Shown here piece by piece: positions 25,511 to 29,240 of a stretch of 64,000 nucleotides of DNA (position 1 is its first letter; each line of letters starts with the position of its first letter). The DNA is from Saccostrea cucullata. Lineage: Eukaryota. The position numbers and the translations under genes were made by a program. Under the pieces are notes generated by a model. The model saw only the letters and a program-made list of their open reading frames with translations. It was not told where the DNA came from and searched no databases. Location of the stretch: positions 1 through 64,000 of the forward strand of contig NW_026925447.1 of the NCBI RefSeq assembly GCF_032062105.1, in the 5' to 3' direction.

Positions 25511-25792
25511 ACTCGAGAGGAAAAACAGATTACCAAACTGAAGGTTTAAATTTGTGAGGATAGGTATAAGGAACCAACAGACAACTTCTGGCTTGGCTTG
25601 GCGAAATCAAGCAATACAGATAATGTCATACATATGGTATAACGCTCTGATATACTATTGGTAACTGATGTCAGCAACAGACATTTCAAATAAATTAATA
25701 AATACTGTGTATATTTAAAGTAATGAAACTGCCTCAACACGTATGGCTCCGTGCTCAGTGACATATAGCATAAACAAAGTGGTATGAAATCC

Positions 25793-26642
25793 TTAACACG
25801 TATGGTCCCGTGTTTAGAAAATCTACCATTAACAACATGTGAATAACTAAACACGTATGGTCCCGTGTTTAGAAAATCTTCCATTTACAACATGTGACCC
25901 ACTAAACACGTATGGTCCCGTGTTTAGAAAATCTACCATTTACAACATGTGACCCATTAAACACGTATGGTCCCGTGTTTAGAAAGTCTTCCATTGACAA
26001 CATGTGACCCACTAAACACGTATGGTCCCGTGTTTAGAAAATCTACCATTTACAACATGTGACCAATTAAACACGTATGGTCCCGTGTTTAGAAAGTCTT
26101 CCATTGACAAAATGTGACCAACTAAACACGTATGGTCCCGTGTTTAGAAAATCTACCATTTAAAACATGTGAAAAACTAAACACGTATGGTCCCGTGTTT
26201 AGAAAATCTTCCATTGACAACATATGACCCATTAAACACGTATGGTCCCGTGTTTAGAAAGTCTTCCATTGACAACATGTGACCAACTAAACACGTATGG
26301 TCCCGTGTTTAGAAAATCTACCATTAACAACATGTGAATAACTAAACACGTATGGTCCCGTGTTTAGAAAATCTTCCATTTACAACATGTGAATCACTAA
26401 ACACGTATGGTCCCGTGTTTAGAAAATCTTCCATTTACAACATGTGACCCATTAAACACGTATGGTCCCGTGTTTAGAAAGTCTTCCATTTACAACATGT
26501 GACCCACTAAACACGTATGGTCCCGTGTTTAGAAAATCTACCATTTACAACCTGTGACCCACTAAACACGTATGGTCCCGTGTTTAGAAAATCTACCATT
26601 TACAACCTGTGACCTACTAAACACGTATGGTCCCGTGTTTAG
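25793..26642. repeat. 55-bp tandem array with 16 hairpin cores TAAACACG-TATGGTCC-CGTGTTTA
   Basis: Loop recurs every 55 bp from 25801 to 26626. Degenerate copies with divergent linkers at ~25736 and 26679-26927. Confidence 0.97.
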
Positions 26643-28279
26643 TGAAACATTCCATGTACAAGATGATCTAATTATTCAAATACATTTGGTCCTGTGTTTA
26701 GCCAATATCTATTGAATGATATAACATACTAAACATGTATATGGTCCTGTGTTTAGTCAAACATTTCATGTACAAAACATCTACTTTCTAAGCACGTATG
26801 GTCCCGTGTTTAGAGAAATATTTTTATATACAACATGATGCAACAACTTAACACATATGGTCCTGTGTTAACTGAGATATTCCATATACCAAGTGATGCA
26901 ACTTTCTTAACATGTATGGCCCCATGTAAAGTGAAACAACATTGCATACAACAATCGAATGCATAAGCTTAAAAGCATCATCAATAGAAATTGCAGGGTT
27001 AATAAGCATGTATTTTTTTTTCCCTGTATGACAGTAAATCCTCATTAGGATACCATTATGCTACAGTAATTTGCATTTGTCAAACGTAGGGTCCCGCTCG
27101 ACGGCTACTGAGCTCTGCAGAGATTGATTATAGAGATGATCCATGAACTGTGTTCACCCTTTGTTTCATATTTTGTAAAACAACTATTATAGAAGATATG
27201 ATTTCATAAAATGTGTTTCTTTTGAAGGACCTGTGATTCTACCATTTTCTTTCTTTTTCCATCTAAAAATATATATATTCATGATCCTATGATCACCCTA
27301 AGTCTTCTTTGATTTCTAGAAAGTTTTATTTTAGGTAGTTTAGTACTATCTGACATAAAACTGGTAAATATCCCTCTGATATGACTTTTAGTTTACTAGA
27401 TCTTGATCAAAGCTTTGAAATATTCAAATGAATCTCTTTATCCTGAATGAGGTTAGTTTTTAGATTAAAGTTGTTGTTTTGTTTTGTTTTGTTTTTTTTT
27501 TTCTTTTTTATGCATCGGTCAATTGAGTTAAAGTGATTGGGATTTAAAATTTTGGGCCCTGCTCCATATCTCAAACCCCTGTTTCAGAAGAATTGACTAA
27601 AGTTTGCTTCATGTACTGATAAAAGACATGAAGTGTATAAAAATCATTATTTCAAAATTAGGATATATATATTTTTTATACAGAAACTATTGAATTAAGT
27701 GAAAAACCATTTTATCCTGATATTATCTTACTCAATGGACTTGTTGACAGAGCAGTCCCCAGAAACATGAACCAATACATCACTCAAACTTAAAGTGGCT
27801 GTTGCCACTATACTTTGCTATGTTGAGGCAATGTCCTTGGTAATGGGCACTTGTTTGTCCACTGTTGTGTTGTCTGTGCATGCATATCTGATTTCTGACT
27901 GTTGTTTCCACATGGCCCATATAGTTTCTGCAGGTGTTACCCAGTGTGGATAGTGTCTGTTTCTAATTTGGTGGGATAGGTAACTCTGGAAAAATAAAAG
28001 TGTAAACTACTATCCAGTATATGATATTCTTTTTTTATCAAGTGCTCTGATCTAAATCAATATTTTAAGCCATGTCCTATACAACTGAACAAGCAAGATA
28101 AATTCTTAGAGAATGACATAATTATTTTACTTTGGGTATTGCACAGCTGCAATAAATCAACAGGGAATAACAGGTTATGTAAATTCCAACATATGTCTAC
28201 ATATGTGCAGCATAAATTATTCTTATTATAACATTATATTACCAAAAAAGCACTTCAAAATTTGCATGTCATAATATAC

Positions 28280-29240
28280 TACCATGCAGGTCTTGCACAA
28301 ATCAACAAACACAAGTGCATTATTGTGCATATGGTCCTGCACAATCCAATAAAATACATGTGTATATGGTCCTACACAAATCAACAAACACAAGTGCATT
28401 ACTCTGCATATGGTCCTGCACAATCCAATGAAATACATGTGCATATGGACCTACACAAGTCAACAAACACAAGTGCATCTGATCCTGCACATTTTCCCTG
28501 CAAAGTTCAACAAATTCATGTGTATATGGTCCAGGACCTACACAAGTACTAGTCATCAAAAATGTGTGCATAGGGACCTGCATGAGTCAACAACTTGCAT
28601 GTGCATATATTGTCCTGCACAAGTGACTAAGTCAACAAAATACAAATGCATATGGTCCTGCACAAGTGACTAAGTCAACAAAATACATGTGCATATGGTT
28701 GCGTACAAGTCAACAAAACAAAATATATGTCAATTTGGCATAATTATGTATGGTTCTGCATGAGTCGACAAAATACATGTGAATATAATTCTGCCCAGAT
28801 CAACAAAATGCATGTGCATATAATCTTTCATGAGTCAAAAGGTAATACATGTGCACATGGTCTTGTCCATGTCAACAAAATACATATGCATATTGTTCTG
28901 CACATGTCCACAAAATATGCGTATATGTTCCTACAAGAGTCAACCAAATGTGTCAGTGAAATGAATGTGAATATGGTCCTTCACAATCATAAAATACAAC
29001 ATAACATGTAAATCAGTGGTGGGTTTGCATGGTAAACATAAGTAGTGTATGTGGACCTCACTCTACACTAATTCTCAGTAAAAGGTCACCTGAAACTATG
29101 GTGTGCACCCTTAGCAACAATACTATATCAGCATTAAATCATGTAAATCATTCTACCTACAATATATATGTATATACAAGCTGTGCCTATGACCTGCACA
29201 GTTTATGTGATAAATGTGTATGTGGTCCCACGTACACTTT
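28280..29240. repeat. Degenerate ~35-45-bp array with hairpin core TGTGCA-TATGGTCC-TGCACA
   Basis: Repeated CATGTGCATATGGTCCTGCACAAGTCAACAAAATA-like units. Confidence 0.9.

What the first reader, a model, noticed from the sequence alone, without database searches (positions are those of the whole stretch)
25736..29240. Two unrelated arrays present the same 8-nt loop TATGGTCC on different, covarying stems
Seen: the 55-bp array has TAAACACG-[TATGGTCC]-CGTGTTTA, and the array 2 kb away has TTGTGCA-[TATGGTCC]-TGCACAA (28323-28344). Variants keep pairing through double changes: TGTGTA/TACACA (28359-78), TGTGAA/TTCACA (28966-85), TTAACACA/TGTGTTAA (26848-71) and ACATG/CATGT with loop TATGGCCC (26910-27). 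Loop length stays 8 in most copies while linkers diverge; there are roughly 30 or more copies. Inference: a multivalent set of stem-loops recognised as RNA or ssDNA, for example packaging, RT or recombinase-binding sites of the parasitic element, or a protein sponge. The minus-strand loop GGACCAUA contains a DRACH m6A motif. Neutral alternative: palindrome self-correction by template switching.
Basis: partly seen in the sequence, partly recalled or inferred. Interest (0 to 1): 0.85.

Follow-up and report, generated by a model that had tools for sequence, protein, structure and literature searches.

The report
Oyster retrotransposon hairpin identity tags
The hairpins belong to a parasitic, non-coding copy of an oyster Ngaro retrotransposon; related bivalve elements carry similar hairpin arrays, each lineage with its own loop sequence, in an intron just before gag, probably as a tag by which the element's protein picks out its own unspliced RNA.

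Summary
Observation confirmed: about 35 hairpins with an 8-nt loop on two stem types whose linkers show no homology. Both arrays lie in one 7.4-kb non-coding element (window 23172-30555, minus strand) with Ngaro-type split direct repeats, decayed SGNH and gag remnants and 26-40+ matching loci in an oyster genome (Saccostrea cucullata). On element RNA the loop reads GGACCAUA. One array sits in a GC-AG intron between the SGNH ORF and gag, which RNA reads show spliced; the other lies after the gag remnant. The same loop, on other covarying stems, fills this intron in all coding families examined from one well-supported clade; genome-wide it is confined to these elements in the matches listed. Other Ngaro lineages in oysters, pearl oyster and scallops have arrays at the same place with different loops (23 of 25 spacers). 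None of 69 genomic SGNH-gag pairs lacks the intron. Best reading (about 0.5): a lineage-specific multivalent RNA tag bound by the CCCH-CCHC Gag to select unspliced RNA for copying, which the parasite has amplified. Binding is not shown, RNA versus cDNA is unresolved, and m6A is unlikely. No paper describing it was found.

The parts
23172..30555 (-). Whole non-autonomous Ngaro-type element, about 7.4 kb, order A1 - internal - B1 A2 - C - B2
   Evidence: Self-BLAST; other genomic copies at 88-97% with sharp common ends; RNA depth drops to zero beyond the end
30346..30555 (-). Split direct repeat A1 (5' end)
   Evidence: 99.5% identical to A2; flanks differ between copies
29559..29722 (-). Decayed C-terminal remnant of the SGNH hydrolase ORF
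   Evidence: tblastn with the SGNH of autonomous family C12788, E 3e-4; weak
27986..29566 (-). GC-AG intron; donor AG|GCCAGTAT conserved across families; alternative GT donor at 28282
   Evidence: Joint 27985-29567 with ends CT..GC, 6 reads from 3 starts in X22 and 1 in X23; joint 27985-28283 with ends CT..AC, 4 reads in X23; donor table
28322..29235 (-). Array 2: about 13-19 hairpins, loop GGACCAUA, stems UGUGCA/UGCACA and UGUGUA/UACACA, inside the intron; positional homologue of the arrays in autonomous families
   Evidence: same stems in C12788 and C6667
27511..27931 (-). Decayed gag remnant (stops and frameshifts)
   Evidence: tblastn E 1e-8 and 8e-7 with C12788 gag; E 7e-6 with C1481 gag
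27080..27101 (-). Single hairpin with a third stem (GUCGAGCG/CGUUUGAC, two G.U pairs); loop is GGACCAUA in other copies
25736..26929 (-). Array 1: 22 loop sites, 15-16 in near-identical 55-bp units, stem CUAAACACG/CGUGUUUAG; outside the intron, where RT and YR were lost; 12-31 sites per copy
   Evidence: an 80%-identical subfamily amplified a different 96-bp two-hairpin unit at the same place
24924..25595 (-). Array 3: 3'-UTR repeats with a second small hairpin motif (CAGA-AGTTG-TCTG)
   Evidence: Homologous to the 3' UTR of C12788; same motif after YR in scallop and other elements
24612..24645 (-). Conserved G-rich tract and hairpin just 5' of B1
   Evidence: Present in four coding families; four 3'-only copies begin at or next to it
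24184..24624 (-). Split direct repeat B1; the B1/A2 junction GGAACATAAAATAGT rebuilds the joined ends
   Evidence: 98.5% to B2; junction nearly the same in autonomous families
23976..24183 (-). Split direct repeat A2
23172..23616 (-). Split direct repeat B2 (3' end)

Best explanation
The hairpins are a cis-acting, lineage-specific, multivalent RNA tag of Ngaro-type tyrosine-recombinase retrotransposons. SHOWN: in coding elements the order is A1, SGNH ORF, intron with hairpin array, gag, RT/RNase H, YR, 3'-UTR repeats, B1A2-B2; the intron of the window's family is spliced in part of the RNA; genomic copies keep it; loops are fixed within a lineage while stems covary; loops differ between lineages. 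INFERRED: splicing at a weak GC donor splits the transcript into an mRNA (gag start placed next to the SGNH stop) and an unspliced genome RNA that alone carries the array. INFERRED: Gag/ORF1 oligomers bind the loops through their CCCH-CCHC zinc fingers, many sites at once, and so select their own lineage's unspliced RNA for the reverse-transcription particle. The window's element has lost all four ORFs but kept the ends, the splice sites and the tag of the GGACCAUA clade, and has added a second, expanding array (about 35 hairpins against 4-13 in coding families), which would let it out-compete helper RNA for the helper's proteins.
For: Loop matches are 120 on the sense strand against 2 antisense in 13.8 kb. 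GGACCATA is the only 8-mer present at least 3 times in each of five introns that hardly align. Covariation on 49 distinct hairpins: 82% of cells paired, 77 double changes against 32 +/- 6 in shuffles, all 6 pairs vary on both sides. Genome-wide pattern 471 versus 36 control; of the first 100 listed, 96 are fully Watson-Crick, 4 have one U.G pair, and all lie on 15 contigs at these elements. All GGACCATA families fall in one clade, support 100/99. Other lineages have other loops at the same place. Intron spliced in two runs. No intron-less copy among 69 SGNH-gag pairs (spacing at least 854 nt against about 345 nt in the joined contig L040) or 40 scored copies of this family. Gag has invariant CCCH and CCHC cysteines, with weak likeness to MBNL/TTP RNA-binding fingers (E 0.16-0.75). 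Precedents: retroviral Gag zinc fingers select unspliced RNA through structured Psi (PMC5035971); repeated stem-loops with one loop motif act as packaging signals in STNV (PMC5699041); DIRS-1 RT acts in trans (section heading in PMC7192593).
Against: No binding or mobility data. Array 1 lies outside the intron, so spliced RNA of this family still carries about 22 hairpins, yet no intron-less copy was seen (23 candidates unscored). The Gag core has no recognisable capsid fold, so 'packaging' may be RNP assembly. G.U versus A.C mismatches are 26 to 24 in this clade, so RNA is not separated from cDNA. Two spacers show no array (C9844, ERZ25069870). Reads are few and unstranded; intron coverage could be pre-mRNA or DNA. 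Covariation counts are not corrected for relatedness, and the loops of other lineages were found with pairing as a criterion.
Confidence: 0.5

Rival explanations
1. The array is a regulatory RNA element bound by an element-coded protein (Gag or the SGNH protein) that controls intron retention, nuclear export or translation, in the way Rev acts on RRE, and not selection for reverse transcription itself.
For: Array lies in a partly spliced intron with a conserved weak GC donor; lineage-specific loops fit a self-coded reader; a feedback switch from mRNA to genome RNA would need such a site.
Against: Array 1 was added and amplified outside the intron in two subfamilies, which a splicing switch does not need.
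Confidence: 0.24
2. The hairpins act in the single-stranded cDNA (loop TATGGTCC), binding RT, Gag or YR during copying, circularisation or integration.
For: DIRS-1 amplifies through linear single-stranded cDNA (PMC7192593); stems are mostly Watson-Crick and fold on both strands; no G.U excess in this clade.
Against: Position in a spliced intron fits RNA sorting; recombination occurs at the B/A junction; G.U exceeds A.C 28 to 7 in other lineages, though U-rich composition and circular selection weaken this.
Confidence: 0.09
3. A host factor reads the hairpins (m6A on GGACC with YTH readers, an export factor or a sponge effect), or they are DNA sites of an internal promoter for gag.
For: GGACC is a DRACH; tandem sites upstream of an ORF often serve as enhancers; TG...CA in the arms is 80-90% conserved between most families.
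Against: The A is G in 7 of 74 sites; at least ten other loops coexist in the same host or its relatives, without DRACH; array 1 changes the conserved arm bases by double changes, which keeps pairing but not sequence.
Confidence: 0.1
4. Neutral: one ancestral palindrome was spread by slippage and template switching during reverse transcription, with stems repaired by self-correction.
For: Retroelements make tandem repeats readily; array length varies between copies; loops are not more conserved than linkers among recent copies.
Against: Self-correction keeps stems, not loops, yet the loop is what survives between introns whose linkers are at background identity and whose RTs differ by about 30%; arrays recur at one position in 23 of 25 spacers with different sequences.
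Confidence: 0.07

Closest known systems
Ngaro superfamily of tyrosine-recombinase (DIRS order) retrotransposons
   Same: A1 / B1-A2-B2 split direct repeats, gag-like ORF with zinc fingers, RT/RNase H, YR, SGNH hydrolase in the coding relatives (definition in PMC9210276, PMC4157794).
   Different: The window's element is non-coding. In these bivalve families the SGNH ORF is 5' of gag (after YR in Xenopus, PMC9210276) and is separated from it by a spliced intron with a hairpin array, which the papers found do not mention.
Retroviral Psi packaging signal bound by Gag nucleocapsid zinc fingers
   Same: Structured RNA near the 5' end, upstream of gag, proposed to mark unspliced RNA for a zinc-finger Gag (PMC5035971).
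   Different: Psi is one complex element; here 4-35 small, independent hairpins share a loop. No capsid fold was found in this Gag. Works-like only; function untested.
Multiple dispersed packaging signals of ssRNA viruses (STNV, MS2)
   Same: Many stem-loops with a common loop motif and variable stems act together on a cognate protein (PMC5699041).
   Different: There they are scattered and degenerate; here they are clustered, with a strict 8-nt loop, in a transposon intron.
BARE1/BARE2 and other parasitic retrotransposon pairs
   Same: Separate RNA pools for translation and copying; a defective subfamily uses the helper's Gag (PMC3735527).
   Different: LTR elements; BARE splicing yields gag-only mRNA and no hairpin array is involved. 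TOC1 and kangaroo-1 (algal PAT-type) carry internal tandem repeats, from memory only; no paper retrieved.

Membership tests
Ngaro (non-autonomous derivative) | Split direct repeats A1 ... B1 A2 B2 | tested here: met
Ngaro (non-autonomous derivative) | Multicopy with precise ends, short A-rich core at the junction, no target-site duplication | tested here: met
   Different flanks and sharp ends; no duplication beyond 2-4 A/T letters in four copies with both ends
Ngaro (non-autonomous derivative) | Own intact gag, RT/RNase H and YR ORFs | tested here: not met
   Only SGNH and gag remnants; hence non-autonomous
Ngaro (non-autonomous derivative) | Descent from coding elements with gag, RT/RH, YR and split repeats | tested here: met
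   C12788: all ORFs open, 77% in B, 86-90% at the start of A, homologous 3' UTR; Pfam RVT_1 and Phage_integrase on relative L040
Ngaro versus PAT/DIRS1 | No methyltransferase domain; hydrolase may be present | tested here: met
   In L040 the RT/RH ORF runs into YR with no MT hit, unlike the nested DIRS1-type element; SGNH ORF present (weak Lipase_GDSL hits)
Ngaro | RT groups with reference Ngaro elements (e.g. zebrafish) | not tested
   No reference sequence was on hand; the tree holds only relatives found here
Packaging signal (Psi-like) | Present in unspliced RNA and removed from spliced RNA | tested here: inconclusive
   True for array 2 and likely for coding families (L040, run type unknown); not for array 1
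Packaging signal (Psi-like) | Specific binding by cognate Gag; needed in cis for copying | not testable with these tools
   Indirect only
Packaging signal (Psi-like) | Gag forms a capsid | tested here: inconclusive
   Confident model (pLDDT 90) matches no capsid or other fold
Known Rfam RNA families | Match at gathering score | tested here: not met
Tyrosine-recombinase site (lox/FRT type, 8-bp spacer) | Conserved arms, crossover in the spacer | tested here: not met
   Arms covary, spacer fixed; element ends map to the B/A junction

The most novel reading that the evidence does not exclude
Ngaro retrotransposons use a self-recognition code: each lineage pairs a distinct hairpin loop, arrayed in a retained intron, with a co-evolving Gag zinc-finger module. 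This keeps dozens of co-resident families apart, and parasites cheat by multiplying the tag. It would be the first RNA-selection signal for any tyrosine-recombinase retrotransposon and a natural library of orthogonal hairpin-protein pairs like MS2/PP7.
Probability: 0.4. Interest if true: 0.85.

Novelty: new variant of a known kind. Interest (0 to 1): 0.68.

Why it matters
How tyrosine-recombinase retrotransposons choose the RNA they copy is unknown in the papers found, and their Gag has no known fold. This gives a concrete, short, testable cis-signal, about a dozen natural loop variants with their matching Gag sequences, a spliced/unspliced switch, and a parasite that appears to have amplified the signal. 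If binding is specific, the pairs could serve as orthogonal RNA tags.

Tried and rejected
Host-gene exons: the ORF-like pieces are SGNH and gag remnants. Rfam: nothing. Copy C4128 as autonomous helper: its ORFs are a nested DIRS1-type element plus a Harbinger piece. A 2.25-kb 'minimal element' that keeps only ends and hairpins (C2093, C14995, C11003): all three share the same flanks and the right flank continues as intron sequence, so it is one rearranged locus, not a mobile family. Likeness of the loop to the junction (GGAACATA): the junction is similar in M. gigas, where the loop is unrelated, so probably coincidence. Common origin of arrays 1 and 2 beyond the hairpin: not detected. G.U bias as proof of RNA: inconclusive. 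The joined (spliced) sequence was not searched; intron loss was tested from exon coordinates. Ten paper searches found no description of such arrays; subscription reviews of these elements were not searchable.

Full report
OBSERVATION. There are 25 exact TATGGTCC sites in the interval and one elsewhere in the window; 35 sites in the element have at least four of five stem pairs. The linkers of the two arrays show no homology once loops are masked. A further hairpin with a third stem lies at 27080-27101. Rfam has no match.

THE ELEMENT. Self-comparison shows two interleaved direct repeats. On the minus strand they read A1 (30555-30346), internal, B1 (24624-24184), A2 (to 23976), C, B2 (23616-23172), the split-direct-repeat order of Ngaro and PAT elements (PMC9210276). 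The unit recurs in the genome at 88-97% identity; 26 places match the B1/A2 junction. Ends are sharp, flanks differ and there is no target duplication. Some copies may be haplotype duplicates. The host is Saccostrea cucullata, by NCBI names on 99%-identical proteins. The element has no long ORF but holds remnants of an SGNH hydrolase and of gag.

CODING RELATIVES. A pattern search led to other families with the same loop. Their layout is A1, SGNH ORF, 0.8-1.7 kb spacer, gag, RT/RNase H, YR, 3'-UTR repeats, B1A2-B2. The closest is C12788, with all ORFs open, 77% identity in B and nearly the same junction. No methyltransferase was seen, so Ngaro fits better than PAT; a tree with reference elements was not made.

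THE INTRON. The spacer starts with a conserved AG|GCCAGTAT in most families and ends at a pyrimidine tract and AG just before the gag ATG. I predicted the same intron in the window and laid poly(A) reads: a joint 27985-29567 with GC-AG ends is seen in two runs (6 and 1 reads), and an alternative GT donor at 28282 in one. The intron is also covered, at lower depth than the flanking exons; the libraries are unstranded and shallow. Contig L040, from another sample of unknown library type, has SGNH 7 nt from gag. Array 2 is inside the intron. Array 1 lies after the gag remnant, outside it; I found no counterpart in coding families.

CONSERVATION. Sites picked by loop alone are 120 on the element's sense strand and 2 antisense. 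Five introns that hardly align share GGACCATA as the only 8-mer present three times in each, and identity falls to background beyond four bases from the loop. On 49 distinct hairpins all six pairs show double changes, 77 cells against 32 +/- 6 in shuffles, with much lower scores for slid registers; relatedness is not corrected for. Genome-wide the hairpin pattern has 471 matches against 36 for its control; the 100 listed are all paired and all at these elements, and the top covariance-model hits lie mostly on the same contigs. Among recent copies of the window's family, loops, stems and linkers carry similar numbers of changes, as expected for mutation after insertion.

OTHER LINEAGES. The GGACCATA families form one clade (100/99). 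Elements outside it carry arrays at the same place with other loops: AGAGTA, CAGTAT, CATTT, GTTA, ACTG, CATT and TATATGGTC in this genome, CGGAGTT in S. echinata, CTGTGTT in M. gigas, TAGTAT in Pinctada, CAGTAT in Mizuhopecten, GGGTG in Argopecten. Several show covarying stems within one intron, for example eight fully paired distinct stems around CATTT and six around CAGTAT. In all, 23 of 25 spacers examined have an array (one judged by eye); two do not. These loops were found with pairing as a criterion, so only the within-family covariation is independent evidence.

MECHANISM. None of 69 genomic SGNH-gag pairs lacks the intron, nor do 40 scored copies of this family, although spliced RNA exists. 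That fits copying of unspliced RNA only. Gag ends in conserved CCCH and CCHC fingers, weakly like MBNL and tristetraprolin; its helical core matches no known fold, capsids included. Loops that differ between families sharing one host point to an element-coded reader. I therefore favour a multivalent tag bound by Gag that selects the lineage's unspliced RNA (0.5), working like retroviral Psi (PMC5035971) and like the repeated stem-loops of STNV (PMC5699041). The parasite carries about 35 hairpins against 4-13 in coding families; array 1 has 12-31 sites per copy, and an older subfamily amplified a different unit at the same place. Control of splicing or export by the same protein is the main rival (0.24). 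Action on cDNA (0.09), host factors or m6A (0.10) and neutrality (0.07) are weaker.

LIMITS. Binding, folding in cells and need in cis are untested. Array 1 survives splicing, which the simple model does not explain. G.U and A.C mismatches are balanced in this clade. An apparent minimal element proved to be one rearranged locus.

VERDICT. A real feature of a known transposon superfamily. The element is an ordinary kind of non-autonomous derivative; the intronic, lineage-coded hairpin array is not described in any paper I could search. New variant of a known kind, interest 0.68.

Noticed in passing
window 24924-25595; L040, L052, L054, L056, L057 3' UTRs: A second repeated motif (GGTCAGAA-n-TTGTCTGCT, small hairpin) follows YR in 2-7 copies and, unlike the intron loops, is shared between distant lineages from oyster to scallop; possible RT or polyadenylation-related signal.
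   Followed up: partly
window 24612-24645; L073, L075-L077: Four 3'-only copies all begin at or next to a conserved G-rich tract plus hairpin just 5' of B1; candidate priming or second-strand start site, which is unknown for these elements.
   Followed up: partly
L021 3355-3978 and all coding families: The SGNH hydrolase ORF is the first ORF, 5' of gag, whereas it is reported after YR in Xenopus Ngaro; splicing places the gag start a few bases from its end.
   Followed up: partly
P0004:135-335: The Ngaro Gag core folds confidently (pLDDT 90) as a helical bundle with a beta-hairpin and CCCH-CCHC fingers, with no match in PDB or viral libraries; 4168 relatives at 50% clustering.
   Followed up: partly
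L022 2300-7900 (G000:C4128): A copy of this family is interrupted by an intact-looking DIRS1-type element (gag, RT, MT, YR) and a Harbinger transposase.
   Followed up: partly
L021 (G000:C1481), L082 (G000:C14973): Internally deleted copies that keep SGNH and the intron (one also most of gag) but lack RT and YR.
   Followed up: no
window 6477-7556 (-): Single-exon 359-aa ORF with an LRAT/HRASLS domain (Pfam E 3e-12).
   Followed up: no
window 16563-19703 (+): Broken LINE with endonuclease and RT pieces; another endonuclease fragment near 37889.
   Followed up: no
window 54517-55225; 61896-62810 and 20880-21820: 53-bp tandem array with a perfect 14-bp palindrome per unit; two related 147-bp satellite arrays in opposite orientation.
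   Followed up: no
window 3946-4726, 12752-12941, 16104-16255, 35056-35313, 42555-42710, 47036-47202: Several long inverted repeats, probably MITE-like elements; 41530-42543 and 50194-51210 are an inverted pair at 82%.
   Followed up: no
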